A DNA stretch of 64,000 nt from Macrostomum lignano (GCA_002269645.1 NIVC01000532.1:186001-250000); one strand, 5' to 3'; positions 4,373 to 60,778 are shown, counted from the first letter of the stretch. Notes: generated by a model from the letters alone, not told the origin. Program-made: numbers and translations.

Positions 4373-5273
4373 ATGTCGACTCCAAGGGCGCTCCTTCTCG
4401 CCATGCTGAGCCTCGCCTGCCTGCGCAGCCTGCAGTCCTGCCAGCCGCCCTACCAGCCCGAGTCCGGCTTCTGCCTGCTCGTGAACACCATGCACAGCCG
4501 CAGTCGGCTGGTGCCAGGCAGCTCGTCTGTGCCAGGCCGTCGGAGGCGAGCTGGTGATGGAGCCAGCCGCCATCCGGGCAGCTGCACCGTTCGCCAAGGG
4601 CTCGGTGATGCTGTGGGTCGGCGTCACCGACATGCTGGAGGAGCGGCGGACTAACAGGTGAGGCAAAAAGAATCTAGTATCGATTATTTCTGCACACAGC
4701 AAATTTGATTGCATTTTGTGCTGAACAAAGAACTCTGAAAATCTCATCTGAATGCTCATTCATTAGCCTTTGATGAGTAAATATGCTAATTATGTAGATA
4801 ATATTAGGAGGTCCTCACTGATCTGATATTCTCCTCTTCTCAGGAGCGGCTGGCGCATGGCCAATGGAAGCGAATTTGTTGCCCCAAACTCTGACTGGGA
4901 ATCTGGCTACCCAAACAACATCGACAACTCGGACGACATGCTGGCTCTAAAAAGCGGTCTACTGGTCGACTTGATCTCATCAAACCTGATCGGCTTCGTC
5001 TGCCAGCCCGTGGCGACGCCGAACAGCGGAACCTTCCGTCGGACCAGCTTCCTGCAGCTGGGCGACATCACGCCCTACTACTGCTACACGGAGGTGCAGT
5101 CGGTGCAGCCCAGGCTGCTCTGCGTTCGCCAGTGCGCTGCCCGCTGGGAGTGTCGGGCGGCTCTGTTCAACCGGGCCGAGTCTCGCTGCCGCATGCTGGA
5201 CTTCGCCGACGCGAGCGCGGGCGACGCCATCGAGAAGAGCGGCGCTTGGGAGAAGTTCGTCAAGGTCTACTGA
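4373..5273 (+). pseudogene. Secreted C-type lectin + PAN/apple gene, copy A; exons 4373-4657 and 4844-5273; frameshifted
   Basis: Signal peptide MSTPRALLLAMLSLAC, CTLD WVGVTD motif and PAN CxxxC...C...C. GT-AG intron 4658-4843. A 4-bp insertion (ATGC after GTGAACACC, about 4490) relative to the other copies shifts exon 1 out of frame. Confidence 0.85.
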
Positions 5274-6342
5274 GAAAAACAGCGGTTAAAAATACCAAAT
5301 GGCCACTGAAGTTAAAAGAAACTCTTAACTTACAGGAAAACCAACTTTAACCAAAACTAGTAGAAAATCAACTCGACAGCAAGTCATATCGTGAGCAAAA
5401 CAATGAAAGACGGCCACATTCAAAACTCCTAGAAGACTTGTTACCTCTGAAAAATCCCAGAAAATAAATTCTCCTTTTTTTGCGCCAAAGAGTTTAGAGA
5501 TTCGGGACTTTCTTGCATCTACCCTGAAAGTATAAAGCTTGTTGCTGTTTCTGTCCTCAATTTAATCTTTCTACTATTACGTCTCAGTCAGAAGCATTGA
5601 AAAACGAATATGTTTGCATTGTAACTTAGCATGGCCTAATATTGAAATATCAAGCTTTTGCTGAGGATCCTATATTTGAAGTTAATAACCAAAACACTCC
5701 TTTTCTTTTCGATGTAGTCTATTGTTTTTTCAAATACTTGTTGGGCATACTCTCTGCTTTACGAATATTTGTGGCAACTATATCTATTTTCCAAATATTA
5801 CAAATCTGTATCGAATTTTCTTCTGGAATTTACACGAGATTGTGCAGGAGCCCCGGAATCCGGATGTTTCATTTTGCCTGAGTAGCAACGCAAGGCGCTA
5901 CTCAAGTTCCGAAGCAAGCCGATGAGGAGTTTGCTTTCAATGTTGTTAAGGAAGATGAGACGCAGGCTTCACTTCCGTCATTCTTTCGGGAGCGATGGGA
6001 AAGAGGCCAAGGCATTGCCATGCCCCGTTTCCTTCCTAGAAAAACCAACTGACTAAAACTTTTGTGAGCCGACAAAGGAAGCCAAACATTGATTTCCCCG
6101 CATTGGGTGAGAAGGCGGTGTTTCGGAGTTACCCACAGTCAGCGATCTGAGAGACTTTCTCAAGACACCCGCGAGAAAGTTTCACTTCCGGATGTAAAAT
6201 ATCGTTAGAGCTTTGCTGTCATGGATGTTAAATGCTGGCGAACACAAGGACTGCTAAATTAAGACAGCAATCTTTGTTTGTAGTCCTTAGGCTGGTACCT
6301 AAGATCATATATACTTTACAAAACCTTTGCTTTACAAACCTT

Positions 6343-7791
6343 TCAGTGTAGTTGAGAAAGCTCATGGATCCACCTAGATGTCGGTAGCAGAAACACCGCC
6401 AGCTTTACGAACCATTTGTGCGCTCGGCGACATGCGCTGTAAGGCTGGGCTGCGGCATCCATCCGATCCACACCTCCCATGTTCTGATTATATTGCAACA
6501 CCGAGTTGGGCTTCAGCATCTGCTGCTCCACACCACCTCGCAGTACCCGGCTAAATAAAGAGCTAGCAGCTGTTGAAGAAGATTCCAACAGATAGACAGT
6601 CTTTGTTCCTGAGCTTCGCCTGTCAACCAGCTTCACAGCGAGGATGTCACCATGTCGGGCAAATACTTGGTGTTTGCAAGAGCATATCTCGCAGAATCGG
6701 TGGGACGCCTCGTTCTTTGCGAACGGTCCCAGTTAAGGTTGTTCCTCTGGTCAGTAGGAACTTGGCCAGTCGCACTGATGAAAACCAACTGTCGCAAAAG
6801 ACCCGATATCGAAGGTCCAGAATGTCGCAACAAAGTCTACGACGACTCTCTCACTGACTGAGAGTTCATTCGCAATGGTGGATGAATGTATCAGACAGTT
6901 CCACATGTAGCCTGTAGAAGACTCTGCAAGGCAGTACAATTTGATTCCAAACTTGGCTCTCTTGTTGGGCATGTACTGCTTAAAAAGCAGCCTCTCTTTA
7001 TGGAGGAGCAGCACTTCATCAACGGCAATGCTTTGACCAGGCAGGTAGCTGTTCCTGCAAACTGTCCAGACAATGTCTTAGAACGGCCTGGTCTTGCACA
7101 AGGGATCATCAGCGTCGAAGTCAAGACAGTCATAGCAACGCAGCCATGTCATGATTTGTTGAAACCGTTAGCGGGGGAGCATCTTCATGCTTTGAAAGTA
7201 GGGATGGAAGTAGAACGGGTCCGTGGACCAGTAAGCCGTCAGCTCCGGTTTCTGTACAACTTCAGTATAAAATATAACGCCGATCACCTTCTTCATCTCA
7301 GAAACAGTGCAGGGCTTCCACGTTCTGAGCCCGTAAGGTAGTTCAGCATCTCGGTGTTCTTTTTGAAACTTGGCAATATCCAGCTGTGCTCTCTTGTTTG
7401 TCCACACGCACATCTGAAGCAGAAAGTCATCGGGTAAAAATTGCTCGAAAATGACTGTGCAGCCATCGTCAACATCAGCAGGTACAGAGAATCTCGGATT
7501 GACTTCGCTTGCCCCGAGGAACTCGGGAAGAGAATTAGCTCGAGCATCGGTCTCTGGAGTTACTGATCTCTAATCATCGTGCATCATTCCCTGATCGTCT
7601 TCCTCCGGTCCATCGTTGCCTGCTTGATCTTCGCCACCGTCCTCTCCCTCGCTCTCAGCAGTGACCAATGATTCATCGCTCGACTTATCGCTCGATTCGC
7701 TGTCGAGGCCCAAATTTTGCAAGGCTAGCTTGGCTGCTTGTCGTTGCAGTCTGACCGCTTGCATTGTAAGGAGGCACGAGTAGAAACTCAT
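6343..7791 (-). mobile_element. piggyBac (PGBD4-like) transposase pseudogene, 3'-truncated
   Basis: Fragments read: acidic N-terminus (7570-7791), WKPCTVSEMKKVIGVIFY...YWST, KQYMPNKRAKFGIKLYCLAESSTGY and YNQNMGGVDRMD...KWFVKL. There are multiple stops and frameshifts. Confidence 0.9.
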
Positions 7792-8194: not shown

Positions 8195-10090
8195 ATAGTG
8201 CAAACTGTATTAAGTATTGTTCCCTTCTGTCTATGGCTGGGATAGTGCAAACTGTATAAGTATTGTTCTCTTCTGTCTATGGTTGGGATAGTGCGAACTG
8301 TATAGGTATTGTTCTCTTCTGTCTATGGTTGGGATAGTGCGAACTGTATAGGTATTGTTCTCTTCTGTCTATGGTTGGGATAGTGCGAACTGTATAGGTA
8401 TTGTTCTCTTCTGTCTATGGTTGGGATAGTGCAAACTGTATAAGTATTGTTCTCTTCTGTCTATGGTTGGGATAGTGCGAACTGTATAGGTATTGTTCTC
8501 TTCTGTCTATGGTTGGGATAGTGCGAACTGTATAGGTATTGTTCTCTTCTGTCTATGGTTGGGATAGTGCAAACTGTATTAAGTATTGTTCCCTTCTGTC
8601 TATGGTTGGGATAGTGCAAACTGTATTAAGTATTGTTCTCTTCTGTCTATGGTTGGGATAGTGCAAACTGTATTAAGTATTGTTCCCTTCTGTCTATGGC
8701 TGGGATAGTGCAAACTGTATTAAGTATTGTTTCCTTCTGTCTATGGCTGGGATAGTGCAAACTGTATAAGTATTGTTCTCTTCTGTCTATGGTTGGGATA
8801 GTGCAAACTGTATTAAGTATTGTTCCCTTCTGTCTATGGTTGGGATAGTGCAAACTGTATTAAGTATTGTTCTCTTCTGTCTATGGTTGGGATAGTGCAA
8901 ACTGTATTAAGTATTGTTCCCTTCTGTCTATGGCTGGGATAGTGCAAACTGTATTAAGTATTGTTTCCTTCTGTCTATGGTTGGGATAGTGCGAACTGTA
9001 TAGGTATTGTTCTCTTCTGTCTATGGCTGGGATAGTGCGAACTGTATAAGTATTGTTCTCTTCTGTCTATGGTTGGGATAGTGCGAACTGTATAAGTATT
9101 GTTCTCTTCTGTCTATGGTTGGGATAGTGCGAACTGTATAGGTATTGTTCTCTTCTGTCTATGGCTGGGATAGTGCGAACTGTATTAATTATTGTTCTCT
9201 TCTGTCTATGGTTGGGATAGTGCGAACTGTATAAGTATTGTTCTCTTCTGTCTATGATTGGGATAGTGCGAACTGTATTAATTATTGTTCTCTTCTGTCT
9301 ATGGTTGGGATAGTGCGAACTGTATAAGTATTGTTCTCTTCTGTCTATGGTTGGGATAGTGCGAACTGTATAAGTATTGTTCTCTTCTGTCTATGGCTGG
9401 GATAGTGCGAACTGTATAAGTATTGTTCTCTTCTGTCTATGGTTGGGATAGTGCGAACTGTATAAGTATTGTTCTCTTCTGTCTATGGTTGGGATAGTGC
9501 GAACTGTATAAGTATTGTTCTCTTCTGTCTATGGTTGGGATAGTGCGAACTGTATAAGTATTGTTCTCTTCTGTCTATGGTTGGGATAGTGCGAACTGTA
9601 TAAGTATTGTTCTCTTCTGTCTATGGTTGGGATAGTGCGAACTGTATAAGTATTGTTCTCTTCTGTCTATGGTTGGGATAGTGCAAACTGTATAGGTATT
9701 GTTCTCTTCTGTCTATGGCTGGGATAGTGCGAACTGTATAAGTATTGTTCTCTTCTGTCTATGGTTGGGATAGTGCGAACTGTATAAGTATTGTTCTCTT
9801 CTGTCTATGGTTGGGATAGTGCGAACTGTATAGGTATTGTTCTCTTCTGTCTATGGTTGGGATAGTGCAAACTCTATTAAGTATTGTTCTCTTCTGTCTA
9901 TGGTTGGGATAGTGCGAACTGTATAAGTATTGTTCTCTTCTGTCTATGGTTGGGATAGTGCGAACTGTATTAGGTATTGTTCTCTTATGTCTATGGTTGG
10001 GATAGTGCGAACTGTATTAGGTATTGTTCTCTTCTGTCTATGGTTGGGATAGTGCGAACTGTATTAATTATTGTTCCCTTCTGTCTATGG
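8195..10090. repeat. 46/47-bp minisatellite, about 41 copies
   Basis: Unit CTGTCTATGGTTGGGATAGTGCGAACTGTATAAGTATTGTTCTCTT, head-to-tail with no spacers. Confidence 0.97.
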
Positions 10091-10874: not shown

Positions 10875-11830
10875 ATGTCGACTCCGAGGGCGCTCCTCCT
10901 CTCCCTGCTGAGCCTCGCCTGCCTGCGCAGCCTGCAGTCCTGCCAGCCGCCCTACCAGCCCGTGTCCGGCTTCTGCCTGCTCGTGAACACCACAGCCGCA
11001 GTCGGCTGGTGCCAGGCAGCTCGTCTGTGCCAGGCCGTCGGAGGCGAGCTGGTGATGGAGCCGGCCGCCATCCGGGCAGCTGCGCCGTTCACCACGGACT
11101 CGGTGAACTTGTGGGTCGGCGTCACCGACATGCTGGAGGAGCGGCTCACAAGCAGGTCGGAATTCCAGCAAAGTTCTAGAAAATGAATGCGTTGAAAACT
11201 GCCCATACTAATCAATTAACAAAAAAATTGCAATTGCTATACCACTTCTTGTCGTGCACTGAATTCTGAAGGACGCAACTTGAACGAGAATTGAAAATAA
11301 CGATCAGACAAACCGAAAACCAACTCTGCAAACTGATAATAAGCCTTCTAGTGGTTCGTCGTTCAATTTTCTCTTTTAACTGAAATTTCCATCTTCTCAG
11401 GAGCGGCTGGCGGATGACCAATGGAAGCAAGTTTGTTGCCCCAAACTCTGACTGGGGATCTGGCTACCCAAACAACTATGACCACTCGGATGACATGCTG
11501 GCTCTAAAAAACGGTTTGCTTCTCGACTTTGTCTCATCCAATCTGGTTGGCTTTGTCTGCCAGCCCGTGGCGACGCCGAACAGCGGAACCTTCCGTCGGA
11601 CCAGCTTCCTGCAGCTGGGCGACATCACGCCCTACTACTGCTACACGGAGGTGCAGTCGGTGCAGCCCAGGCTGCTCTGCGCTCGCCAGTGCGCTGCCCG
11701 CTGGGAGTGTCGGGCGGCTCTGTTCAACCGGGCCGAGTCTCGCTGCCGCATGCTGGACTTCGCCGACGCGAGCGCGGGCGACGCCATCGAGAAGAGCGGC
11801 GCTTGGGAGAAGTTCGTCAAGGTCTACTGA
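10875..11830 (+). CDS. Secreted C-type lectin + PAN/apple protein, copy B; exons 10875-11155 and 11401-11830 (236 aa)
   Basis: Signal peptide, CQPPY...FCLL...WCQAARLC...WVGVTD...GYPNN...FVC and PAN domain. Phase-2 GT-AG intron. 281+430=711 nt in an intact frame. Confidence 0.88.
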
Positions 11831-13364: not shown

Positions 13365-15032
13365 TCACAGCGGTGTCTCGTAGCACCCTGTGCTGGTTGA
13401 CCTTTTCATTCGTGTCTCTGTCTCTCCGTGCCGCCGTCTTCGTCGAGATCGATGCTGCTGCTGCTGCTGCTGCTGATTCTGCTGGTACAGCCTCTGCTGC
13501 TGCTGTTCTTCAGGCTCACTTTCTGGTTTCCCTGTTGAATTCGAGTCCAGTTCATCTACGGAGCTGTGCCTCACCTTCAGAATGGACTTCAGAGCCCCGC
13601 CTCCAACGCTGCCAGCTGGCTTCTGTCGATAAATCGCGATGGTAGGATAGTACACGCAGTACAAAGTGTACTTTACCTGCGGACAACGGTAGCCCGAGGA
13701 CATGGGATTTGACCGCTTTGAATTAAATGAGGCCAAGAAGCTGCCCCTAGAGTTGCGTCGCTGTTGTTGCTGCTGCTGCTGCTGCAGCGGTTGAACCTGC
13801 GACTGTTGGCTGTTGGGAATGGCGCAGTTAATTGCTTCAACGAATGATGCCTCAGGACAGGGCATCGGGATACCCGGTTGCAGCTTTGGCACAGTGCCAA
13901 TGAGGATCGGACAGCCTAGTGTCACGTCTTTCACAGGTACATGGGAAAAACCGAGAGTGACGCACATCTGAATTGCGTACTCCACTGCAATTGGGTGTTG
14001 GAAGTGGCTATTCGGCAGAGATGTCGCTACCACGCCCGGAATGTGTAGCTTGTGCTTCGCCGACCAGAAGCGCTCCGGTTCCTTTCCAGGACCAAGAGAA
14101 GCCACCTGCTCCTGCAGCACAACCTGGTTGCGGCTGCCAAGTCGACGCTGGTTGCTCCCGAGAGCGGTGGCTCGCTGCACCAACTTTAGGACGATTCGCT
14201 GCACTGGTAACGTACTGGAGGAGCAGTGCACGCTCAGATGGCAGTTGACGTCTTCACCTGGCACGTATGCGTCCTTCTTTAGCATCATTGAGGTTTTCAC
14301 CTCGTCTTTCAGCAACTTATTGATAAGGCGATCAACACTGGTGCACGAGGTCTCGTCAAAGGTGCAACGCTGGGCCACAGCCGGCGCATTGAGATCAACA
14401 TCCTCGATCAAGGTGAAAAACTGCGTTGCTTCAATTCCATCGGCCTCGTCCAAGGAGAAGGTGACAACGGCGCGGCAGCAGTAGCGCACGCAGCCGAACT
14501 CCTGACACTCGACTGAGTGCGGCAGCCAGCGGGGAAGCTGAAACTCGAAGCTGCGTTTCTCAACCAATCGGCTGCCTGGCAGAAGGTTTTCCTCGATGGA
14601 CAGGTGACGCCGGCAGACCAGTCTCTGTTTCGAAACGCCGTTACTGGTCTCGGGAGGCAACTCGGAATAGCCGACGCACTCGATCTTGTAACCTGTCGCA
14701 TAGACCGGTCCGCGCGTCTCGACGGTCACCCAGCCGGCGATGCGGTCTCCGCTGCGGAAGACCCGACGGCCGCCGCTGAAGCAGACGTCAAAGAGAAGCA
14801 GGCGACTCTTGGCCGATGCTGTGGCCAGCGCCGACAGGCTGGGCGCCTGTGCTGGCGTTGTCGACGGGGAAAGCGCCGGCGATGAGGTTCCCGACGAGCT
14901 GGCAACAGAGTCGTTGGCGTGCAAGATGACGAGCGACGGCGTCTCTTTGGTCATGCTCATGAGCCCGGGCGCCCCTTCTAGGCGTCTCTGTGAGTTTAAC
15001 AAGGGGTTTTCAGCTAAAGATAAAGCTGACAT
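13365..15032 (-). CDS. Alpha-arrestin (arrestin-domain-containing, ARRDC-like) protein, intronless, 555 aa
   Basis: Arrestin_N hallmarks (VFRSGDRIAGWV, FEFQLPRWLPHSVECQEFGCVRYCCRA) and Arrestin_C (KDAYVPGEDV, IAVEYAIQM, CPILIGTVP), with a polyQ C-terminal tail. Confidence 0.9.
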   Translation of the reverse strand: MSALSLAENPLLNSQRRLEGAPGLMSMTKETPSLVILHANDSVASSSGTSSPALSPSTTPAQAPSLSALATASAKSRLLLFDVCFSGGRRVFRSGDRIAGWVTVETRGPVYATGYKIECVGYSELPPETSNGVSKQRLVCRRHLSIEENLLPGSRLVEKRSFEFQLPRWLPHSVECQEFGCVRYCCRAVVTFSLDEADGIEATQFFTLIEDVDLNAPAVAQRCTFDETSCTSVDRLINKLLKDEVKTSMMLKKDAYVPGEDVNCHLSVHCSSSTLPVQRIVLKLVQRATALGSNQRRLGSRNQVVLQEQVASLGPGKEPERFWSAKHKLHIPGVVATSLPNSHFQHPIAVEYAIQMCVTLGFSHVPVKDVTLGCPILIGTVPKLQPGIPMPCPEASFVEAINCAIPNSQQSQVQPLQQQQQQQQRRNSRGSFLASFNSKRSNPMSSGYRCPQVKYTLYCVYYPTIAIYRQKPAGSVGGGALKSILKVRHSSVDELDSNSTGKPESEPEEQQQQRLYQQNQQQQQQQHRSRRRRRHGETETRMKRSTSTGCYETPL

Positions 15033-30049: not shown

Positions 30050-30124
30050 CAACTGTGTCTTCTGGGTGCTAATATTGATCAGCTGTTTTTTTGTGTCATC
30101 GTTGCTATGGCAATGAATTTGCTG

Positions 30125-46292: not shown

Positions 46293-47181
46293 ATGTCGAC
46301 TCTGAGGGCGCTCCTCCTCTCTCTGCTGAGCCTCGCCTGCCTGCGCAGCCTGCAGTCCTGCCAGCCGCCCTACCAGTCCGTGTCCGGCTTCTGCCTGCTC
46401 GTGAACACCACAGCCGCAGTCGGCTGGTGCCAGGCGGCTCGTCTGTGCCAGGCCGTCGGAGGCGAGCTGGTGATGGAGCCGGCCGCCATCCGGGCAGCTG
46501 CGCAGTTCGCCACGGGCTCGGTGATGCTGTGGGTCGGCGTCACCGACATGCTGGAGGAGCGGCTCACCAGCAGGTGAGGCAATCAGCATCTAGTATTTCT
46601 GCACACAGCAAATTTGATGCCACCTTTTGCTAAACAAAGAACTTCAAAAATCTCATCCGATGCTCATTAATTAGCCTTCGATAAGTACAGATGCTGATTA
46701 TCTAGATAATATCAGGAGGGTCTCACTGAACTGCTATTTTCATCTTCTCAGGACCGGCTGGCGCATGGCCAATGGAAGCGAGTTTGTTGCCCCAAACTCT
46801 GACTGGGAATCTGGCTACCCAAACAACTATGACCACTCGGATGACATGCTGGCTCTAAATAACGGTTTGCTTCTCGACTTTGTCTCATTCAATCTGGTTG
46901 GCTTTGTCTGCCAGCCCGTAGCGACGCCGAACAGCGGAACCTTCCGTCGGACCAGCTTCCTGCAGCTGGGCGAAATCACGCCCTACTACTGCTACACGGA
47001 GGTGCAGTCGGTGCAGCGCAGGCTGCTCTGCGTTCGCCAGTGCGCTGCCCGCTGGGAGTGTCGGGCGGCTCTGTTCAACCGGGCCGAGTCTCGCTGCCGC
47101 ATGCTGGACTTCGCCGACGCGAGCGCGGGCGACGCCATCGAGAAGAGCGGCGCTTGGGAGAAGTTCGTCAAGGTCTACTGA
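46293..47181 (+). CDS. Secreted C-type lectin + PAN/apple protein, copy C; exons 46293-46573 and 46752-47181 (236 aa)
   Basis: Same architecture as copy B. Intact frame with a GTGAGG...TTCTCAG phase-2 intron. Confidence 0.9.
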
Positions 47182-49138: not shown

Positions 49139-49191
49139 GTGATTGAAAGCAGCTTTCTGAATTTTATCTAAACACTACAGAAATGTATGTA

Positions 49192-50558: not shown

Positions 50559-50931
50559 TACCTGCGACTGCGTACCTCAAAAGGTACGGAATGGATTTTT
50601 GCTGATAACGAGCACAGTTTCGAAGTGAAGACTATCGGAGTCCATTCAGGCAAATTGAAAAAGTTTTTACACAAGTTTTTTAGCAATGTACTTTCTTTAA
50701 TTCAAAAGCATAAATTAGTATTGGCTAATATCTGAATAATGCCGTTAAAAGATTAAATAATCTAACAAGTTTAAATTAGTTAGAACTGTTTGGCACATTA
50801 AGGTTTCACGCCTGGAGCTGGTCAAATAGAGCCAGGGGTCAGCTTTGATGGCAACTATACGAGCGTACTTTGAATTACATGTAGTTATATAATTCCCGTA
50901 AAATTTAACATTAAAGTACATTGTTTGTAGG

Positions 50932-51012
50932 ATGTCGATTGACGACTCCGACGGCGTTCCTCCTCTTATTTGCTGACATCACCGACATGCTGCAGGAGCG
51001 GCTCACTAGCAG
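50932..51012 (+). pseudogene. Lectin-PAN exon-1 relic with an internal deletion of about 200 nt
   Basis: ATGTCGA..GACTCCGACGGCGTTCCTCCTCT joined to ATCACCGACATGCTGCAGGAGCGGCTCACTAGCAG|GT. Confidence 0.75.
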
Positions 51013-51533
51013 GTTTGTTCAGAACTTAAAATCATAATCGAGCTGATATATCAATCATATTTCCAGTCTGAAGCGCTGAGCTTAATGTATCAACAATTGT
51101 GGTTTGTTAGACAATTATAGAGACATTCTGTTTCTCGTAGTGCCTACGGTTCACGCCCACGATCGTATTGCTTGGCTAATCCCTAAATAAGTCATCAGAA
51201 ATCGGGAAACCTAAATCATTTTTTACAGTTTTAAAAAATTAGAACTATAGATTTACAGTGCAATGCCATGTGGCATTAACTCTGTCAGGGCGATTTGAAC
51301 ACGAAATATAATTTTATTAAAAACTGCTCAAATTGACTCAAAATTGTAAAAAAGCTAATTCGAATCCAAGAGTATGTGCTACTCGTAAGCAGCAGACGGT
51401 CCATTTGCCCATGCACCTGAGCAACATGACCAATCAGAGTCTGCCAAGCTGCGAGAGGTTAAACACCGGTATAGCAATTTCCATGCGAATGATGAAGCCC
51501 GCACAGCTGGAAAGCCGCTGGTTTACCGCAGGG

Positions 51534-51689
51534 ATGTCGACTGCAAGGGCGCTCATCCTCTCCCTGCTGAGCCTCGCCTGCCTGCGCAGCCTGCAGTCCT
51601 GCCAGCCGCCCTACCAGTCCGTGTCCGGCTTCTGCCTGCTCGTGAACACCACAGCCGCAGTCGGCTGGTGCCAGGCAGCTCGTCTGTGC
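51534..51689 (+). pseudogene. Lectin-PAN copy D, 5' half of exon 1
   Basis: MSTARALILSLLSLAC...WCQAARLC, then homology stops abruptly. The upstream region matches copy A. Confidence 0.9.
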
Positions 51690-52166
51690 TCACGCGTAAT
51701 ATGCACGTGACTGACACTCGTGAAACACGTTTTGTGTCCCTTCTTTACGCGAATATACGCGTGTAAGAATACGCACAGAATACACGAGTGAGTTACGCGC
51801 TCAAAAAGCGCGCTTTACACACATTGAACATGAATAATACGCGCAATAAACGGATAGAAAGTTGTCGGGGCAGCGCTGACAGCGCAGACAACAGGAGCCT
51901 CGTCGATAGAGTAGGACCCGGGATTAGGCCAGAATTGGGAAAACTTCTCCGTACTCGATTCAGTGGTTTCTTGACCGGTTCTTTCATATTTCCTATCTGC
52001 CGCGCATCACAGGACGGAGTGATTAAATCCAAAACAGGAAAACTGACGCAGGAGTGCCAGAAAGCACAAACATATAGAATTCGCCTGGCTAAATTCATAC
52101 TACGAGTATGAGTCTTATAAGCTCAGGTCCTCGTCAAAAAAGGTCCTCACAGCCCTCAGTTTGCTC

Positions 52167-52431
52167 AGTATGGCGCCCCTGTAGTGTATAATATGGCGCC
52201 CCTGTAGTGTATAATATGGCGCCCCTGTAGTGCATAATATGGCGCCCCTATAGTGCATAATATGGCGCCCCTGTAGTGTATAATATGGCGCCCCTGCAGT
52301 GTATAATATGGCGCCCCTGCAGTGTATAATATGGCGCCCCTGTAGTGTATAATATGGCGCCCCTGTAGTGTATAATATGGCGCCCCTGTGGTGTATAATA
52401 TGGCGCCCCTGTAGTGTATAATATGGCGCCC
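52167..52431. repeat. 23-bp minisatellite
   Basis: Unit TATAATATGGCGCCCCTGTAGTG, about 11 copies. Confidence 0.95.
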
Positions 52432-52974
52432 CACTCTTGTGGTGAAAATACGCCCCCCTTATTTTTTTATTTCTAAATCCGCCTCTGGCGAACAGTGTTT
52501 TAAATTAATAGAATAAACAATAGCAATTCAGAGGTCTACTAACAGAGAGGGTATAGAAAACGCACGATAGATGTATATCAGCCTGAAATTCAGTGAATTG
52601 ATAAGCCCATTAACAGACAGCTGCTGTAACGGCTTCCGCTGCCTGGATTTCCTGGTATTTTCAGAATGAATCTAAATAACAAGCCGTAGATCGTTGCTCA
52701 GCGTCACATGAGAAGAGACAGATCTGCTTCTTTTATCGTATACCAATCAATCGTCATGGAATGTTTTCCTTACATCTCTGCTTCCATTGCTGCTTTTGTG
52801 TGCTATAATTTACTGTATTGATTAAAAAGCATTGTAAAACACGGATAATGGGTATGAAAAAACAACTGAATTTTTAGGTTAGAATTAGAATGGCCCTGTC
52901 GAACATAAAAGACTCATTGGAGAATTGCTAAGATGTTAAGGATTACAGGGGCTGCTGAGAATCCAAGGGTCAAT

Positions 52975-53400
52975 TTCAATTTATCAATTCAATTCCGCGT
53001 CATGCCATTGAATGTTAAAAATGCGCCTGCAAACAGTTAAACGTCTCATGGACATGGTGTTGCGCGGACCTAAATGGGAAGCCTGTCTTGTATATGTAGA
53101 TGACATTGTAGTCATGGGCAGGTCATTACAAGAGTATAATAAGAACCTTGAAAAAGTCCTAAAACGTCTTAAAGAGGCTAATGTTCGTTTAAAGCCCAGT
53201 AAATGTCTCCTTGCCTCGAAATCCCGGCCATAAATATACTAAGCTATAAAATACTCCAGGTGGTATTGCAGTCGACGAAGAGAAGGTACAAGTGATTACT
53301 ACTTGGCCTCGACCACGAACTGTGAAAGAGGTGCAAAGGTTACTAGGGCTTGAATCTTACCATCGCAAATTAATACAAAACTTTTCCTCATTAGCCGAAA
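52975..53400 (+). mobile_element. Gypsy reverse-transcriptase remnant
   Basis: QFRVMPLNVKNAPA...RLMDMVLRG...CLVYVDDIVVMG...RLKEANVRLKPSKC, then frameshifted GGIAVDEEKVQVITTWPRPRTVKEVQRLLGL. Confidence 0.85.
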
Positions 53401-54309
53401 TGTAATTTCGAGTTTTTGGAAAATATGAATTAATGCGTATTTTACCAACCCAATTCATTATTTGTTTTTGACTCAAATATTGCAATATTGTCACACAGCT
53501 TTGATGTCCTGAAATGTAATGAAATGAAATGAAAAAACTTGATAAACTTGATAAACCTCCAAATAATTACGCTCGTATTAAACATTACTGATATCCATCG
53601 AAGTACAGTGTAAGTTACGCCAAATTCTATAAGTATCACATTGACTGAATATTTCTATGATTCTACTGTAAGTAGCATCATAGTTATTTCGATACTGTTA
53701 CTTTAGTTGGTACTTTGTTACTGCATGTGGACGTACGTACGTCTTACATAAGACAGCTCATATGTTCCTTTTGCAACGATCCCTTGTGAATTCGTTATTC
53801 CCGGGGTATCCGCTTATAAGCGCCTCTGCCCACCCACCTTTTCGGTTGTGTGTAATTGTGAGCGCCTCTTGAGCTGATATACGAAGGATTTCAAGTGGGT
53901 TTCCCGAGTACCTGTGTATTTTGTGGTTGATACATGTGTTAAGCATGTTTTGTAGTAGAAAAATTATCGTTGTTTGTAATCCTGATGAGTATTTTTTTAG
54001 TTGGAGAGTAAAGTATTTTTGTACTGTATAGCGTCTAGTGTAATCTAGTCAACAATGAGGTCAATGCGTTTTCGTAGTAATGATGTTACAGTGTGGTTTG
54101 TTAAAGGCATGTATCATATCGTATTTCATTATTTCGCGCGCATAACCGTACTACTTGTAATCATTCATTCATTTTAACAATATTCTATATGTAATGCGCT
54201 TATGCTCCTTTTGTATTTGTGGATATTTGTCGCCTCGCATGTATTTATTATATTATTTATATTTTATGCACAACGCCATTACACGCGTAATTCGTACTGC
54301 GTCAGAGAC

Positions 54310-54426
54310 TCGGAGGCGAGCTAGCTGGTGATGGAGCCGACCGCCATCCGGGGAAGCTGCGCTGTTCGCCATGGTGAACCTGTGGGTCGGCGATACCGAC
54401 ATGTTGGACAAGCGACTCACCGGCAG
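54310..54426 (+). pseudogene. Lectin-PAN exon-1 3' half (probably the continuation of copy D)
   Basis: TCGGAGGCGAGCT[AGCT]GGTGATGGAGCCG...TGGGTCGGCGATACCGACATGTTGGAC...CAG|GT, with a 4-bp duplication. Confidence 0.8.
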
Positions 54427-54639: not shown

Positions 54640-55620
54640 ATTCTAACCCTAACCAAAACCCTAAATTCAATATTTTGTCCATGAGTTTTTGCATGATCGA
54701 TGCTTCTATGATTTTTGGCATGACGCTTCCATTGTTTTTGCATGACGCTTCCATTATTTTTGCATGATGCTTCCATGATAAACATTTTTAATAAGCTAAA
54801 TGAGTTAAGTTATAAGCTACCCTAACCCTAACCCTAACCCGAATCTTAACGCAATTACCCTGAACCTAACCCTAAACCTAAACCCTAATACCAACCCTAA
54901 CACTAACCCTACAGCCTGACATCTGCATAAGTTTGTGAAGAGCTAGTAGTATTTTTTAGCTTAGTATCTTAGCGTTAGGGAGCCAAAAATACAGTACAAG
55001 TTTTGTAATAAACTACATGTAGCATCTCTTTGCAATATACCTCAGAAGTCCCTTGTAAGCCTTGAAATGTCAGTAATTCCCCCCACAAGCTTTAACAAAT
55101 CAACTCCCCCCTTGACATCTCAGCGATGCCCCAAATAAGCCTTGAAGTCTAAAAAAATCTGTCAACCTTCTAACCCTAACCCTAGCCTAACCCTAACCCT
55201 AACCCTAGCCTAACCCTAACCCTAACCTAACCCTAAAGCATTGAAATTTCAGTAATTCTGAGTCATTATAGCACTACTACAGCGTTATAGCGATTCCCTG
55301 CAAGCCTCGACATCGTAGAGATTCCCAAATGAATCTCTTCGCTTCGACATGAAGCTTCTTTTATTTTTTACATTATGCTTTTTCTATCAGTGAGCCCTGA
55401 GGAGCCAACAAAAAATGTAATAAAAAGTTTTCATTAAACTACATGTAGCTTCTGACTTTAGCCTTGAAATCTCATTTATACCCCCGTGAGCCTTGACATC
55501 TCAGCTATTCCCCCCCATAAATCTTGAAATCTAAAAAAATCCCCTGTTAACCTTGAAACCCGATAAAATATAACCCTCAACCCACACCTGACCTAAACCT
55601 AACTTTAACCCAACCTAAAG
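54640..55620. repeat. Patches of degenerate (TAACCC)n telomere-like repeat within a dispersed repeat
   Basis: CCTAACCCTAACCCTAAC runs at about 54645, 54820-54910, 55170-55235 and 55570-55600. Confidence 0.8.
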
Positions 55621-56149
55621 CCTTGAAATCTCAGCAATTCTTCTCCCCTAAGCCTTGGCATTTTAGTGATTCCTTCTTTAAGAATCACAGCACTATAACG
55701 ATTTCCACCAAGCTTTGACATTGTAGCAATTCCCAAATTAATCTTTTAACTTCGACATGACTTTTCTTATATGTATACATAGTGCTACTTTTATTTTTTA
55801 CATGACTCTGCTTCTATCAGCGCCCCCCCCTGTGGCGAGCCAACAATGAATGTAATAAAAATTGAGTAAAGTACATGAACTTTGAAGTAGCTTCTGACTT
55901 TTGCTTTGACATCTCAGAAACCCCCCCCACCTGTAATCTCAGTTATCCTCTGTGAGCCTTGACGTCTCAGTAATTCTCCCAGCACAGCACTGTACTATAG
56001 CTTCATTTAATTTTTATATGACACCTTTCATGTCTGACATGGCGCTTCTTTTGATTTTTACATGACGCTTCTTTTATTCTTCCATTATTCTTCTTAATTT
56101 TTTAAATGACACTTTCATTAGTTTTTATATGAGGCTTCTATGATTGTTT

Positions 56150-58790
56150 GCATGACGCTTCTATGATTTTACCATGACGCTTCTATTATTGTTTGCATGA
56201 CGCTTCTATGATTTTTACATGACGCTTCTATGATTGTTTACATGACGCTTCTATGATTGTTTACATGACGCTTCTATGCTTGTTTACATGACGCTTCTAT
56301 GATTTTTACATGACGCTTCTATGATTGTTTACATGACGCTTCTATGATTGTTTACATGACTCTTCTATGATTGTTTACATGACCCTTCTATGATTTTTAC
56401 ATGACGCTTCTATGCTTGTTTACATGACGCTTCTATGGTTTTTGCATGACGCTTCCATGATTTTTTACATGACGCATTAATGGTTTTTTCATGTCACTTC
56501 TATGATTTTTTCATGACGCTTTTTTGACTTTTACATGACGCTTCTATGATTTTTTAAATGACGCTACTATGATTGTTTGCATGACGCTTCTATGATTTTT
56601 ACATGACGCTACTATGATTGTTTTCATGACGCTTCTATGATTTTTAATGACGCTACTATGATTGTTTACATGACGGTTCTATGATTTTTACATGACGCTT
56701 CTATGATTTTTTCATGACGCTTCTATGATTTTTTACATTACGCTTCTATGATTTTTTCATGTCACTTCGATGATTTTTATGACGCTTCTCTGATTTTTTA
56801 TGACGCTATTTTGACTTTTACATGACGCTTCTATGATTGTTTACATGACGCTTCTATGATTTTTTAAATGACGCTACTATGATTGTTTGCATGACGCTTC
56901 TATGATTTTTACATGACGCTACTATGATTGTTTTCATGACGCTTCTATGATTTTTAATGACGCTACTATGATTGTTTACATGACGGTTCTATGATTTTTA
57001 CATGACGCTTCTATGATTTTTTCATGACGCTTCTATGATTTTTGCATGACGCTTCTATGATTATTACATGACGCTTTTATTATTTTTTCATGACGCTTCC
57101 ATGATTTTTTCATGACGCTTCTATGATTTTTTATGACGCTTTTTTGACTTTTACATGACGCTTCTATGATTGTTTGCATGACGCTTCTATGATTGTTTAC
57201 ATGACGCTTCTATGATTTTTTCATGACGCTTCTATGATTGTTTACATGACGCTTCTATGATTTTTTACATTACACTTCCATGATTTTTATATAACGCTTT
57301 TACGATTTTTACATGGCGATTCTATGATTGTTTACATGACGCTTCTATGATTTTTTACATGACGCTTCTATGATTTTTTCATGACGCTTCTATGATTTTT
57401 TACATGACGCTTCTATGATTGTTTACATGACGCTTCTATGATTTTTTACATTACGCTTCTATGATTTTTATATAACGCTTTTACGATTTTTTACATGGCG
57501 CTTCTATGATTGTTTACATGACACTTCTATGATTTTTTACATGACGCTTCTTTTTAAAAAGTCTTTTAGTTTTCCTGATGTTGAAAAGCTTTAATTAAAA
57601 AAATTATACTCTATGAAAATTCGAACCATCGTCGCTGCATTTGGCAGTTCAGTTTGTTCACCTCTAGGCTAGCTCTCATCGTTTTGATAACATCAAATTT
57701 TGCACTTATATAATTCAACACTTTAAAATCCAAGCATAGAGTAAATCACACGAAGCAGTTATGACATAATCAGTTTCTCAGTCAGTCAGTATCAGTTAAC
57801 AATATGGTTACGCAATTTAAATCAAGTCTGGTGCTACGCTTCCACACTGCATTTTCAATTCAAGTCGGAGTTACAATTCAGTGATGATGCAATCTATTTC
57901 AGAATCAGAATTCAACCAGTCAGTTTTTTCTCTAGCATTCTTACAATGCATTTCAAGTCGAAAAGTTTGCTTGACCTTTGCAAAAAAGCATGTTTTTCGA
58001 ATATTTAATGCCTTTAGCATCGAGCAATTTCTTAGCCACGATGCATGTACCGTCACGGGAAAATTTCTGATCGAACAGTGCAAGTCTCATGAAAATCGGT
58101 CCAGCCATTTTTTCTCTAATCGATTGCGTACAAACAAACAAACAAACAACTCATTTTTAGTATATAGGATTTCATGACGCTTCTATGATTTTTAATGACG
58201 CTACTATGATTGTTTACATGACGGTTCTATGATTTTTACATGACGCTTCTATGATTTTTTCATGACGCTTCTATGATTTTTGCATGACGCTTCTATGATT
58301 ATTACATGACGCTTTTATTATTTTTTCATGACGCTTCCATGATTTTTTCATGACGCTTCTATGATTTTTTATGACGCTTTTTTGACTTTTACATGACGCT
58401 TCTATGATTGTTTGCATGACGCTTCTATGATTGTTTACATGACGCTTCTATGATTTTTTCATGACGCTTCTATGATTGTTTACATGACGCTTCTATGATT
58501 TTTTACATTACACTTCCATGATTTTTATATAACGCTTTTACGATTTTTACATGGCGATTCTATGATTGTTTACATGACGCTTCTATGATTTTTTACATGA
58601 CGCTTCTATGATTTTTTCATGACGCTTCTATGATTTTTTACATGACGCTTCTATGATTGTTTACATGACGCTTCTATGATTTTTTACATTACGCTTCTAT
58701 GATTTTTATATAACGCTTTTACGATTTTTTACATGGCGCTTCTATGATTGTTTACATGACACTTCTATGATTTTTTACATGACGCTTCTT
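56150..58790. repeat. 22-23-bp minisatellite ACATGACGCTTCTATGATT(G/T)TTT (56150-57550 and 58171-58790)
   Basis: Direct reading of the sequence. Confidence 0.95.
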
Positions 58791-59407
58791 TTTAAAAAGT
58801 CTTTTAGTTTTCCTGATGTTGAAAAGCTTTAATTAAAAAAATTATACTCTATGAAAATTCGAACCATCGTCGCTGCATTTGGCAGTTCAGTTTGTTCACC
58901 TCTAGGCTAGCTCTCATCGTTTTGATAACATCAAATTTTGCACTTATATAATTCAACACTTTAAAATCCAAGCATAGAGTAAATCACACGAAGCAGTTAT
59001 GACATAATCAGTTTCTCAGTCAGTCAGTATCAGTTAACAATATGGTTACGCAATTTAAATCAAGTCTGGTGCTACGCTTCCACACTGCATTTTCAATTCA
59101 AGTCGGAGTTACAATTCAGTGATGATGCAATCTATTTCAGAATCAGAATTCAACCAGTCAGTTTTTTCTCTAGCATTCTTACAATGCATTTCAAGTCGAA
59201 AAGTTTGCTTGACCTTTGCAAAAAAGCATGTTTTTCGAATATTTAATGCCTTTAGCATCGAGCAATTTCTTAGCCACGATGCATGTACCGTCACGGGAAA
59301 ATTTCTGATCGAACAGTGCAAGTCTCATGAAAATCGGTCCAGCCATTTTTTCTCTAATCGATTGCGTACAAACAAACAAACAAACAACTCATTTTTAGTA
59401 TATAGGA
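56933..59407. repeat. 1238-bp apparently identical tandem duplication (56933-58170 / 58171-59407)
   Basis: Identical ORFs are offset by 1238 (57871 vs 59109, 57881 vs 59119). Confidence 0.95.
58085..58170 (+). mobile_element. Helitron/HINE-like 3' terminus (duplicated at about 59323-59407)
   Basis: GAAAATCGGTCCAGCC...(ACAA)n...TTTAGTATATAGGA resembles the ends of invertebrate non-autonomous Helitron/Helentron elements. Confidence 0.45.
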
Positions 59408-59894
59408 CTTTCGCTGTTCGATAAATTTAGAACAAGGATGACATGCTGGCTCTACAAAGTGTTCTCGAGCACCGCAGGCAGGATGAGCGACGTCTGGGCA
59501 GGACAGGCAGAGAAGTGGAGGAGAGCGTTGCAGGAGATGGAGTCCTCACGTGACGCTTCACTCAATTTTCACTCAAAAATCTGACCCACTGGCAGAATTG
59601 TTGAATATCTCAACTGTCCGGAAAACTGACGACTTGATTCTTGTTTAATAAGGTTTGCAACGAGACCAAGGAACACAGCAATATAGTAAGTTAGATTCTG
59701 CCGAATTCTATTAGCGTTGTGCTATATCAGCCAATCAGGATGAGCGATACGGGTGACAATGAGGAAAGTGTTTCTAAGCCGAATTCAATTGGACATTGGG
59801 GTTTCCAATGGAATTTGGATTTAAACAGAAGCCCGATACGCTTTCAAGGCTGCAGAGTCTCCTGAAGTTTTTAATAACATTTAACTCTGAAGTG

Positions 59895-60778
59895 ATGTCG
59901 ACACCAAGGGTGCTCCTTCTCGCCCTGCTGAGCCTCGCCTGCCTGCGCAGCCTGCAGTCCTGCCAGCCGCCCTACCAGCCCGTGTCCGGCTTCTGCCTGC
60001 TCGTGAACACCACAGCCGCAGTCGGCTGGTGCCAGGCAGCTCGTCTGTGCCAGGCCGTCGGAGGCGAGCTGGTGATGGAGCCGGCCGCCATCCGGGCAGC
60101 TGCGCAGTTCGCCACGTACTCGTGGCTCTGGGTCGGCGTCACCGACATGCTGGAGGAGCGGCTCACCAGCAGGTGAGGCAATCAGCATCGAGTATCTAGT
60201 GTTTCTATCTTAAAGCTAATTTGGTGCTACTTTTGCGGAATAAAAAACTCTGAAAATCTCATCTGAATGCTCATTCATTAGTCTTCAATGCGTAAAGATG
60301 ACTATAGCTTAAATTATAATAGCTGATCTGATATTCTCATCTTCTCAGGAGCGGCTGGCGCATGACCAATGGAAGCGAATTTGTTGCCCCAGACTCTTAC
60401 TGGAGATCTGGCTGGCCAGATAATGGAGGCAGCTCGGATGACATTCTGGGTCTAATCAATGGTCTGCTTTACGACTTTGTCTCATCAAACGCCATCGGCT
60501 TCGTCTGCCAGCCCGTGGCGACGCCGAACAGCGGAACCTTCCGTCGGACCAGCTTCCTGCAGCTGGGCGACATCACGCCCTACTACTGCTACACGGAGGT
60601 GCAGTCGGTGCAGCGCAGGCTGCTCTGCGTTCGCCAGTGCGCTGCCCGCTGGGAGTGTCGGGCGGCTCTGTTCAACCGGGCCGAGTCTCGCTGCCGCATG
60701 CTGGACTTCGCCGACGCGAGCGCGGGCGACGCCATCGAGAAGAGCGGCGCTTGGGAGAAGTTCGTCAAGGTCTACTGA
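59895..60778 (+). CDS. Secreted C-type lectin + PAN/apple protein, copy E; exons 59895-60172 and 60349-60778 (235 aa)
   Basis: Intact frame with a one-codon deletion in exon 1. Most divergent ligand loop (WRSGWPDNGGSSDD). Confidence 0.9.

What the first reader, a model, noticed from the sequence alone, without database searches (positions are those of the whole stretch)
4844..60778. Variable/constant secreted lectin family: divergent C-type-lectin ligand loop fused to a near-invariant PAN domain
Four complete exon-2 copies (A 4844, B 11401, C 46752, E 60349) show a sharp boundary at the last CTLD cysteine (FVC|QPV). Seen: the 273-nt PAN part differs by only 1-3 nt between copies, silent sites included. 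The preceding 156 nt differs at about 22 positions between A and B. A vs E differ at 17 of 52 residues there, against 1 of 90 in the PAN part. The changes fall on the long loop and the WND-equivalent strand (GYPNNIDN / GYPNNYDH / GWPDNGGS; LLVDLI / LLLDFV / LLYDFV). Established: these are the positions that form the CTLD binding site. A second variable patch precedes WVG in exon 1 (PFAKGSVM / PFTTDSVN / QFATGSVM / QFATYSW-). Inference: this is a diversified recognition system (immune, microbiome, adhesion or reproductive) with a constant interaction module.
Basis: partly seen in the sequence, partly recalled or inferred. Interest (0 to 1): 0.85.

Follow-up and report, generated by a model that had tools for sequence, protein, structure and literature searches.

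The report
Lectin gene cluster with patchwork homogenisation
An unidentified animal genome carries a cluster of small secreted lectin-like genes whose "variable binding loop, identical tail" pattern is real, but copy-correction between the genes (gene conversion) explains it better than a proven diversity-generating recognition system.

Summary
Four two-exon copies (A, B, C, E), all on the + strand, encode about 236 aa: signal peptide, C-type-lectin-like domain (CTLD), PAN/apple domain. In five of six pairs the first 157 nt of exon 2 differ at 21-35 positions and the last 273 nt at 1-3 (Fisher p 1e-7 to 1e-14). B-C is the exception (7 vs 4). The contrast is just as strong at silent sites: dS is 0.28-0.45 in the variable part, intron divergence is 0.18-0.28, and PAN dS is 0-0.016. 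dN/dS in the variable block is at most about 1 on all branches with enough changes to estimate it. A dead copy (D) keeps a 95.5-97.4% identical 5' piece while its other piece has decayed to 75-80% with frameshifting indels. Against the nearest outside relative, PAN is 51% identical and the CTLD about 40%, and PAN synonymous sites do change. Close pairs in other species differ uniformly along the protein. The best reading is a birth-and-death gene cluster in which segmental interlocus gene conversion homogenises both ends of the coding sequence and an older central block escapes. The CTLD lacks the canonical EPN/WND calcium-sugar site. Copy A is frameshifted. Selection that preserves loop diversity remains possible but unproven.

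The parts
4373..5273 (+). Copy A: exon 1 4373-4657 (4-nt insertion ATGC at 4490-4493 causes a frameshift), intron 4658-4843, exon 2 4844-5273. Variable patch V1 4587-4610, variable CTLD part V2 4844-5003, PAN part 5004-5273. Probable pseudogene.
10875..11830 (+). Copy B, intact, 236 aa: exon 1 10875-11155 (V1 11085-11108), intron 11156-11400 (245 nt, unrelated to the other introns except its last 21 nt or so), exon 2 11401-11830 (V2 11401-11560, PAN 11561-11830).
46293..47181 (+). Copy C, intact, 236 aa: exon 1 46293-46573 (V1 46503-46526), intron 46574-46751, exon 2 46752-47181 (V2 46752-46911, PAN 46912-47181). Its V2 is nearly the same as B's.
50932..51012 (+). Relic D0: internally deleted exon 1 (start codon plus the last 45 nt or so of exon 1, followed by GT).
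51534..54426 (+). Pseudogene D. The 5' exon-1 fragment 51534-51689 is 95.5-97.4% identical to the intact copies. A 2620-nt insertion occupies 51690-54309. The 3' exon-1 fragment 54310-54426 is 75-80% identical with three indels. No exon 2 follows.
59895..60778 (+). Copy E, intact, 235 aa: exon 1 59895-60172 (V1 60105-60125, 3-nt deletion), intron 60173-60348, exon 2 60349-60778 (V2 60349-60508 with the most divergent loop, GWPDNGGS / LLYDFV; PAN 60509-60778).
4274..4281 (+). CCAATCAG box about 100 nt upstream of A's ATG. The same octamer lies upstream of D (51430-51437) and E (59731-59738). These are 3 of the 4 matches in the window.
   Evidence: A and D share 175 nt of 5' flank at 74% identity

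Best explanation
This is a lineage-specific cluster with at least four full-length copies and two relics within 56 kb. All copies lie on one strand and are interspersed with unrelated genes. The genes encode small secreted two-domain proteins: signal peptide (residues 1-22), long-form C-type-lectin-like domain (23-147), PAN/apple domain (148-236). The cluster evolves by birth-and-death plus segmental interlocus gene conversion. Conversion tracts have recently overwritten the 3' 276 nt of the coding sequence (the PAN domain), and somewhat less recently the 5' 210 nt (signal peptide and the beta0-beta1-alpha1-alpha2 scaffold). The central block has not been overwritten and keeps the older divergence (silent K about 0.2-0.45). 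This block comprises the end of exon 1, the intron and the first 155 nt or so of exon 2, and it encodes beta2, the long-loop region and beta3-beta5. Tracts stop where donor-recipient homology stops: at the start codon, at the stop codon, and at the edge of the diverged block. Once established, that last edge reinforces itself through heteroduplex rejection. The paralogues therefore differ almost only in the ligand-facing half of the CTLD. On function (inferred, not shown): the products are soluble binding proteins whose non-canonical CTLD site differs between the A, B/C and E types. That site lacks the EPN glutamate and the WND asparagine, so it is probably not a classical calcium-dependent mannose/galactose site. 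The PAN module is a shared carbohydrate- or protein-binding or oligomerisation unit. It may be tied to the CTLD by a disulfide between Cys46 and Cys174, both invariant across the family.
For: (1) Silent sites show the mosaic. dS is 0-0.016 in PAN and 0.28-0.45 in V2 for five of six pairs. On synonymous counts alone, Fisher p is 1e-6 to 1.5e-4. Intron divergence among A, C and E is 0.18-0.28. The A-E 3' flank is 71-73% identical. Neutral background divergence is thus about 0.2-0.4, and PAN is more than 20-fold below it. (2) Homogenisation acts on dead DNA. Pseudogene D keeps CDS 2-156 at 95.5-97.4% identity, while its fragment beyond a 2.6-kb insertion is 75-80% identical with frameshifting indels. 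Frameshifted copy A has a PAN part 1 nt different from E. (3) PAN is not intrinsically frozen. It is 51% identical to the nearest outside relative P0005, against 40% for the CTLD halves. Codons differ at 38% of the conserved residues. (4) Close pairs in other species show uniform divergence. (5) B and C have nearly identical exons (dS 0.035) but unrelated introns and flanks. This requires exon-sized sequence transfer. (6) Homology between copies begins at the ATG and ends at the stop codon. (7) GC3 is 0.81-0.91 in the homogenised blocks, 0.57-0.68 in V2 and 0.66-0.81 in neighbouring genes. This is compatible with GC-biased conversion. (8) Domain identities: Pfam PAN_1 in 22 of 23 and Lectin_C in 20 of 23 family members. 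AF2 model pLDDT 80.7, pTM 0.76. Foldseek returns CTLDs with TM 0.66-0.73, and only PAN/apple modules for the C-terminal domain.
Against: The 5' edge of the PAN tract lies within about 15 nt of the CTLD/PAN domain junction in all lineages. A purely mechanical process does not predict this, whereas selection against chimeric CTLDs or for loop diversity does. In the 8-codon V1 patch every change is nonsynonymous, and the E branch has omega of about 1 over 77 codons while keeping all family-invariant structural residues. A subset of sites could therefore be positively selected. P0005 also has higher GC3 in PAN (0.81 against 0.62-0.65), so the GC3 signal is not specific to conversion. Only four copies from one haplotype were available. 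No donor-recipient polarity or tract could be dated. Function is entirely inferred.
Confidence: 0.7

Rival explanations
1. First reader's model. This is a diversified recognition repertoire. Selection actively maintains different CTLD ligand loops, by diversifying or balancing selection or by selection against converted or chimeric loops. The PAN module and N-terminal scaffold are kept identical so that every variant fits the same partner. Gene conversion is the tool and selection sets the boundary.
For: The variable residues map to the EPN-equivalent loop and the WND-equivalent strand. The breakpoint coincides with the domain junction at CDS 423-450, against the cysteine codon at 439-441. V1 changes are all nonsynonymous. 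B-C differences in V2 are 6 nonsynonymous to 1 synonymous. Omega is about 1 on the E branch with the structural residues retained. Three intact copies have their own CCAAT/TATA-like promoters.
Against: dN/dS is below 1 for five of six pairs, and no branch shows a significant nonsynonymous excess (binomial p>=0.46). There are only three loop haplotypes in four copies, and B/C share V2 through transfer, so V2 is not protected from conversion. Codons with three amino-acid states number 5, against about 4.6 expected under a Poisson model (own calculation). The outside relative shows V2 no more diverged than the N-terminal half of the CTLD (40% each). Close pairs in other species are uniformly diverged. 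One of the four copies is frameshifted.
Confidence: 0.2
2. The copies are very recent duplicates. The CTLD loop region has since been accelerated by targeted hypermutation or intense positive selection, while the rest simply has not had time to diverge.
For: Near-identity of PAN (1-4 nt of 273) and of much of exon 1.
Against: Introns are 16-23% diverged among A, C and E, and B's intron is unrelated. Flanks are unalignable or 71-74% identical. V2 synonymous divergence equals intron divergence. The old pseudogene D has a fresh 5' block. The substitutions involve all base classes, so there is no single-base mutational signature.
Confidence: 0.03
3. Assembly or polishing artefact. Reads from different paralogues were cross-mapped, and consensus polishing made the GC-rich PAN and 5' regions artificially identical.
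For: Near-identical paralogous segments are the classic substrate for polishing errors. A's 4-nt frameshift could also be an assembly error. This cannot be tested without reads.
Against: Each copy sits in unique flanks, and the identical runs are only about 120-165 nt long and interrupted by copy-specific differences: B 563, C 450 and 504, and AB|CE at 548. They are easily spanned by reads. The same pattern appears in the separately placed D fragment. The boundary is sharp at silent and replacement sites alike.
Confidence: 0.05
4. Nucleotide-level constraint. The PAN-coding DNA is conserved at silent sites because of extreme codon bias or an overlapping functional element such as an RNA structure, an antisense transcript or an exonic enhancer.
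For: GC3 is 0.9 in PAN, and it is also raised (0.81) in the relative P0005.
Against: Between B and P0005, 16 of 42 conserved PAN residues use different codons. No Rfam family matches anywhere in the window. The pseudogene D 5' block shows the same homogeneity without coding function.
Confidence: 0.03

Closest known systems
'Merohomogenization' of clustered NK-receptor CTLD genes (KLRC/NKG2, KLRA/Ly49, KLRB/NKR-P1, KLRI), Fossum et al. 2011, PMC3210942
   Same: Clustered paralogous genes with C-type-lectin-like domains. Concerted evolution by gene conversion is restricted to part of each gene, giving a sharp mosaic of homogenised and diverged segments.
   Different: In those families the ligand-binding CTLD is the homogenised part and the signalling part stays distinct. 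Here the polarity is the reverse. Those are vertebrate type II membrane receptors. These are small secreted CTLD-PAN proteins of an unidentified invertebrate-like metazoan.
MHC class I/II and immunoglobulin-type V/C organisation (own knowledge)
   Same: Multigene clusters in which conversion or concerted evolution keeps the non-binding parts similar while the binding-site codons stay diverse.
   Different: In MHC the binding-site codons show dN>dS and many alleles. Here dN/dS is at most about 1, only three loop types are seen, and silent sites are as diverged as replacement sites.
Canonical calcium-dependent C-type carbohydrate-recognition domains (Endo180 CRD2 9qy1, mincle 4zrw/8h4v, DC-SIGN 1k9i, CD23)
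   Same: Same fold (Foldseek prob 1.0, TM 0.66-0.73 on the target). Long-form N-terminal hairpin cysteines. WIGL-type strand (LWVGVTD). Outer disulfide alpha1-beta5.
   Different: EPN is YPN in A, B and C and WPD in E. WND is LVD, LLD or LYD. The inner beta3 to post-beta4 disulfide is absent in the window copies. There is an extra invariant Cys46 in alpha1. Sequence similarity is only marginal (E 0.002-0.04).
PAN/apple modules (HGF N domain, plasminogen PAp, fungal copper-oxidase PAN, Sarcocystis SML-2 and Toxoplasma MIC4 apple lectins)
   Same: The C-terminal 90 residues fold as beta-beta-alpha-beta-beta-beta with the core cysteines. Foldseek top hits are exclusively PAN/apple (TMq 0.56-0.60). 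The family profile hits HGF and plasminogen by sequence.
   Different: Five cysteines instead of four or six. Fused directly after a CTLD. No paper in the searched library holds both 'CTLD' and 'PAN domain'. Its ligand is unknown.
Snake-venom C-type lectin-like proteins (snaclecs) and other fast-evolving secreted CTLD families (own knowledge)
   Same: Tandem duplication of small secreted CTLD genes with divergence concentrated in the loops.
   Different: Those families show accelerated exon evolution with conserved introns and UTRs. Here the introns and flanks are more diverged than the exons.

Membership tests
C-type lectin-like domain (CTLD) superfamily | CTLD fold: beta0-beta1-alpha1-alpha2-beta2, long-loop region, beta3-beta4-beta5 | tested here: met
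   AF2 model pLDDT 80.7. Foldseek against PDB gave 103 hits with E<=1e-3, and the listed top hits are all CTLDs (TM on target 0.66-0.73).
C-type lectin-like domain (CTLD) superfamily | Sequence match to Pfam Lectin_C at the curated threshold | tested here: inconclusive
   Window copies score 18.7 and 15.0 bits against a cut-off of 22.6. However, 20 of 23 members of the wider family match at E<=0.01, with a best E of 1.4e-11.
C-type lectin-like domain (CTLD) superfamily | Conserved cysteines: outer pair (alpha1-beta5), inner pair (beta3 to post-beta4), and the long-form N-terminal pair | tested here: inconclusive
   The outer pair (C52, C147) and the long-form pair (C23, C34) are invariant. The inner pair is present in distant members but lost in the window copies and in P0005.
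Calcium-dependent carbohydrate-recognition domain (C-type lectin in the strict sense) | EPN or QPD tripeptide plus the WND motif and a loop glutamate forming calcium site 2 | tested here: not met
   In the alignment to mincle, GEPNN corresponds to GYPNN (GWPDN in E). The beta4 motif is LVD, LLD or LYD instead of WND. About 3 of the 5 ligand positions are retained: N118, D125, D136.
PAN/apple domain | Pfam PAN_1 at the curated threshold | tested here: met
   Copy B scores 22.2 bits against a cut-off of 21.4. Copy E is marginal at 21.1. 22 of 23 family members match.
PAN/apple domain | PAN fold with the core disulfide-bonded hairpin | tested here: met
   Domain-only AF2 model pLDDT 79. Foldseek top hits are HGF N domain, plasminogen, fungal PAN and SML-2 (prob 0.97-1.0). 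The profile matches HGF N and plasminogen by sequence (E 4e-4 to 5e-3).
Concerted evolution by interlocus gene conversion | Silent-site identity inside the tracts much higher than in adjacent silent or non-coding sequence | tested here: met
   PAN dS 0-0.016 against V2 dS 0.28-0.45, intron K 0.18-0.28 and flanks 71-74% identical.
Concerted evolution by interlocus gene conversion | Homogenisation independent of coding function (pseudogenes included) | tested here: met
   Pseudogene D: 5' fragment 95.5-97.4% identical, 3' fragment 75-80% identical with indels. Frameshifted copy A has a PAN part 1 nt different from E.
Concerted evolution by interlocus gene conversion | Paralogues group by species in the tract but by orthology outside it | not testable with these tools
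   No sister-species locus could be retrieved. Protein and metagenome searches found no close relative other than P0005.
Diversifying-selection recognition repertoire (MHC-like, FREP-like and similar) | dN/dS>1 at binding-site codons | tested here: inconclusive
   Regional omega is 0.24-0.75 for pairs. Terminal branches: A 0.45, B 0.39, E about 1.0. None shows a significant nonsynonymous excess. V1 has 0 synonymous changes but only 8 codons. Four sequences give no power for site models.
Diversifying-selection recognition repertoire (MHC-like, FREP-like and similar) | The pattern recurs in relatives, and many distinct variants exist | tested here: not met
   Three loop haplotypes in four copies. 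Close pairs in other species differ uniformly: N 11/78, V2 6/60, PAN 7/98 in one pair and 6/79, 5/51, 9/94 in another.
Diversity-generating retroelement-type CTLD variation | Adenine-specific substitutions templated by a nearby repeat and reverse transcriptase | tested here: not met
   The substitutions involve all bases and include the intron. No template repeat of V2 exists in the window beyond the paralogues themselves. The context is a eukaryotic gene with introns.

The most novel reading that the evidence does not exclude
The cluster is a germline-encoded variable/constant lectin repertoire of a previously undescribed CTLD-PAN family. Selection removes conversion tracts that enter the ligand-facing half of the CTLD, which is why the tract edge sits at the domain junction. 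The A, B/C and E loop types are thus kept as distinct specificities. Conversion keeps the scaffold and the PAN module identical. The PAN module may be disulfide-locked to the CTLD, so all variants would engage one common partner.
Probability: 0.2. Interest if true: 0.65.

Novelty: new member of a known kind. Interest (0 to 1): 0.35.

Why it matters
This is a clean, compact example of partial-gene concerted evolution. Conversion erases divergence in two blocks of a 711-nt coding sequence and leaves a central block untouched. A disrupted pseudogene in the same cluster serves as an internal control. The case shows why a 'hypervariable loop next to an invariant domain' pattern read from protein alignments alone can mislead: here the contrast comes from homogenising the constant part, not from accelerating the variable part. 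The CTLD-PAN architecture, with ten invariant cysteines, is represented in public data only by unnamed sequences on short contigs. If the paralogues prove to have different ligands, the family would be a small new entry among invertebrate-type soluble recognition proteins. As it stands, both the mechanism and the domain types are well known.

Tried and rejected
Searches that led nowhere:
- The word-index protein search with copy B found nothing.
- The same search with the family alignment found 14 distant, unnamed relatives.
- The same search with P0005 found only P0005 itself.
- By my own mistake, the single all-against-all HMMER job was sent with exon 1 only. It still recovered the family.
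- The metagenome scan with back-translated PAN motifs gave 600 pattern matches, none confirmed.
- Exact look-up of the neighbouring arrestin-domain protein found nothing on record.
- The organism could not be identified. Rfam found nothing in the window, and the accession numbers of relatives appear in no paper. Interstitial (CCCTAA)n and the gene content only say 'TTAGGG-type metazoan'.
- Literature searches for the CTLD+PAN architecture returned plant receptor kinases and parasite proteins, or nothing.

Ideas rejected:
- Targeted hypermutation or recent duplication, because the introns and flanks are equally or more diverged.
- Clustering of multiple hits at particular codons as evidence of selection: 5 three-state codons against about 4.6 expected.
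- GC3 as decisive evidence for biased conversion, because the outside relative shows part of the same gradient.
- A transposon origin for B's odd intron: it has no other copy in the window.
- Terminal inverted repeats for the 2.6-kb insertion in D: none were found.

Not possible: mapping the variable sites onto 3D coordinates, because the model coordinates are not exposed. Only secondary-structure mapping was done.

Full report
**Anatomy**

The window is metazoan DNA. It contains GT-AG introns, an arrestin-domain gene, a CoREST-like segment, an FCH/F-BAR gene, mariner and MULE transposases and many minisatellites. Interstitial (CCCTAA)n runs are also present.

A blastn of the first gene against the window finds four full-length copies on the + strand and several fragments.
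- A: exon 1 4373-4657, exon 2 4844-5273.
- B: 10875-11155 and 11401-11830.
- C: 46293-46573 and 46752-47181.
- E: 59895-60172 and 60349-60778.

B, C and E translate to 236, 236 and 235 aa. A carries a 4-nt insertion (ATGC, 4490-4493) that shifts the frame and leads to a premature stop, so it is a probable pseudogene.

Two relics lie between C and E.
- D0 (50932-51012) is an internally deleted exon 1.
- D is an exon 1 split by a 2620-nt insertion (51534-51689 and 54310-54426), with no exon 2.

**What the protein is**

Pfam gives weak but concordant hits: PAN_1 at 22.2 bits (cut-off 21.4) and Lectin_C at 18.7 bits (cut-off 22.6). PDB sequence search finds only CTLDs, namely Endo180 CRD2 and mincle, at E 0.002-0.03.

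A full HMMER scan with exon 1 recovered a family of 230-260-aa proteins with the same architecture. They sit on short contigs from metatranscriptomes, a Tara metagenome, SRA assemblies and one NCBI assembly, and none is named. My query was exon 1 only, by mistake. The closest member, P0005, is 45% identical.

Ten cysteines are invariant across the family. Of 23 members, 22 hit PAN_1 and 20 hit Lectin_C.

AlphaFold2 with this alignment gives pLDDT 80.7 and pTM 0.76. The long-loop region spans residues 81-125, and beta3, beta4 and beta5 lie at 126-130, 133-137 and 143-149. Foldseek returns CTLDs. A domain-only model of residues 146-236 returns only PAN/apple modules: HGF N domain, plasminogen, fungal PAN and the Sarcocystis SML-2 lectin (the sequence profile agrees).

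The canonical sugar/calcium motifs are not present. GYPNN (GWPDN in E) aligns with mincle GEPNN, and LVD, LLD or LYD replaces WND. The window copies have also lost the inner CTLD disulfide.

Cysteine bookkeeping leaves Cys46 and Cys174 unpaired within their own domains. I therefore infer an interdomain disulfide. This is inference only.

**The mosaic is real**

For five of six pairs, exon 2 differs at 21-35 of its first 157 nt and at 1-3 of its last 273 nt (p 1.7e-7 to 1e-14). B-C is the exception, at 7 versus 4. Maximum chi-square breakpoints fall at CDS 423-450, around the last CTLD cysteine codon at 439-441.

The site table shows that the variable region is one contiguous block, CDS about 211-435 plus the intron. 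It is flanked by a 5' block (1-210) with 13 variable sites and a 3' block (436-711) with 4.

**Why it is mosaic**

The decisive point is that silent sites behave like replacement sites. Nei-Gojobori dS is 0.28-0.45 in V2 and 0-0.016 in PAN, and 0.035-0.11 in the 5' block. dN/dS in V2 is 0.24-0.75, except for B-C with 6 nonsynonymous and 1 synonymous changes. The synonymous-only contrast is significant, with p from 1e-6 to 1.5e-4.

The introns of A, C and E are 16-23% diverged, and B's intron is unrelated apart from its last 21 nt or so. Flanks are unalignable, with two exceptions: A-E share about 900 nt of 3' flank at 71-73% identity, and A-D share 175 nt of 5' flank at 74%.

The neutral age of the copies is therefore about 0.2-0.4 substitutions per site or more. 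The PAN block is more than 20-fold younger than that.

Four further controls point the same way.
- **Pseudogene D.** Its 5' fragment is 95.5-97.4% identical to the live copies. The fragment beyond the insertion is 75-80% identical with three indels. Homogenisation therefore does not depend on protein function.
- **Outside relative.** Against P0005, identity is 40% in the N-terminal half of the CTLD, 40% in V2 and 51% in PAN. PAN is only ordinarily conserved.
- **Codon usage.** At residues conserved between B and P0005, 38% of PAN codons differ. Synonymous sites are not frozen by codon bias or by an overlapping element.
- **Other species.** Close pairs (P0045/P0084 and P0068/P0085) differ uniformly along the protein.

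B and C have near-identical exons but unrelated introns and flanks. This requires exon-sized transfers and shows that V2 itself can be converted.

GC3 is higher in the homogenised blocks (0.81-0.91) than in V2 (0.57-0.68) or the neighbouring genes (0.66-0.81). This fits GC-biased conversion. However, P0005 shows part of the same gradient, so I give it little weight.

**Is there selection for diversity?**

There is no statistical evidence for it. Terminal-branch omega in the 77-codon variable block is 0.45 for A, 0.39 for B and about 1.0 for E. None shows a significant nonsynonymous excess. Three-state codons (113, 120, 122, 130, 135) match the Poisson expectation.

Three things keep the idea alive.
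- The tract edge coincides with the domain junction in all lineages.
- The V1 patch has only nonsynonymous changes, plus an in-frame deletion.
- The E loop (W116, D118, G120, G121, S122, Y135) changed radically while every family-invariant structural residue was kept.

A self-reinforcing boundary, in which mismatch-driven rejection stops tracts at already diverged sequence, explains the sharpness without selection. It does not explain the placement at the domain junction.

**Comparison with known systems**

The closest described phenomenon is the partial-gene homogenisation ('merohomogenization') of clustered NK-receptor CTLD genes (PMC3210942). The polarity there is the opposite. The V/C analogy with MHC fails on dN/dS.

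The CTLD+PAN fusion was not found in the searchable literature. Its relatives in the databases are unnamed. The family itself therefore appears undescribed, although it is built from two very well known modules.

**Verdict**

The domain assignment and the location of the variable residues are confirmed. The inference of a diversified recognition system is not established.

The best explanation, at confidence about 0.7, is a birth-and-death gene cluster with segmental gene conversion of both ends of the coding sequence. The residual probability, about 0.2, is that selection on loop specificity shapes the boundary. An assembly artefact is unlikely but cannot be tested here.

Noticed in passing
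window 49189-50561: Tc1/mariner-like element with 228-nt terminal inverted repeats (95% complementary). It encloses an open 265-aa transposase ORF (49490-50287; HTH_48 + Transposase_1/DDE_3) and lies between lectin copies C and D. It looks young.
   Followed up: partly
window 54640-54910 and 55170-55235: Interstitial telomere-like (CCCTAA)n runs just downstream of pseudogene D, where exon 2 would be expected. They suggest a TTAGGG-type metazoan and a rearranged or broken region.
   Followed up: no
window 8195-10090, 27363-28032, 29158-29774, 30095-31193, 31800-33863, 36805-37611, 39655-41000, 56037-57551, 58173-58789: Unusually many long minisatellite arrays with units of 22-46 nt (up to 90 copies, 84-96% matches). 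They create spurious long ORFs. The two arrays upstream of copy E share the unit CATGACGCTTCTATGATTTTT.
   Followed up: no
window 13365-15032 (-): Single-exon 555-aa ORF with Arrestin_N and Arrestin_C domains and polyglutamine runs. It separates lectin copies A/B from C/D/E. It is not on record by exact look-up.
   Followed up: partly
window 33975-35940 (+), 28619-29098 (+), 21628-22260 (-): FCH/F-BAR (GMIP-like) gene exons with a (CTGT)n microsatellite at 34475-34747, a CoREST-like helical-region ORF, and a MULE transposase ORF. These are unrelated genes and mobile elements interspersed in the lectin cluster.
   Followed up: partly
window 51690-54309: The 2620-nt insertion that splits pseudogene D has the motif CACGCGTAAT near both ends and an internal 23-nt tandem array (52169-52432). 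No terminal inverted repeats were found and there is no other copy in the window.
   Followed up: partly
window 4274, 51430, 59731: Three of the four CCAATCAG octamers in the window lie 99-164 nt upstream of the ATG of copies A, D and E. TATA-like boxes lie 60-80 nt upstream of A, B and C. Promoter logic seems kept although the flanks are otherwise unalignable.
   Followed up: partly
L002 (NCBI GCA_046766455.1 contig) and L004 (Tara metagenome scaffold): Distant family members are encoded as uninterrupted ORFs on genomic or metagenomic contigs. The intron seen in the window may therefore be lineage-specific, or these contigs may derive from cDNA.
   Followed up: no
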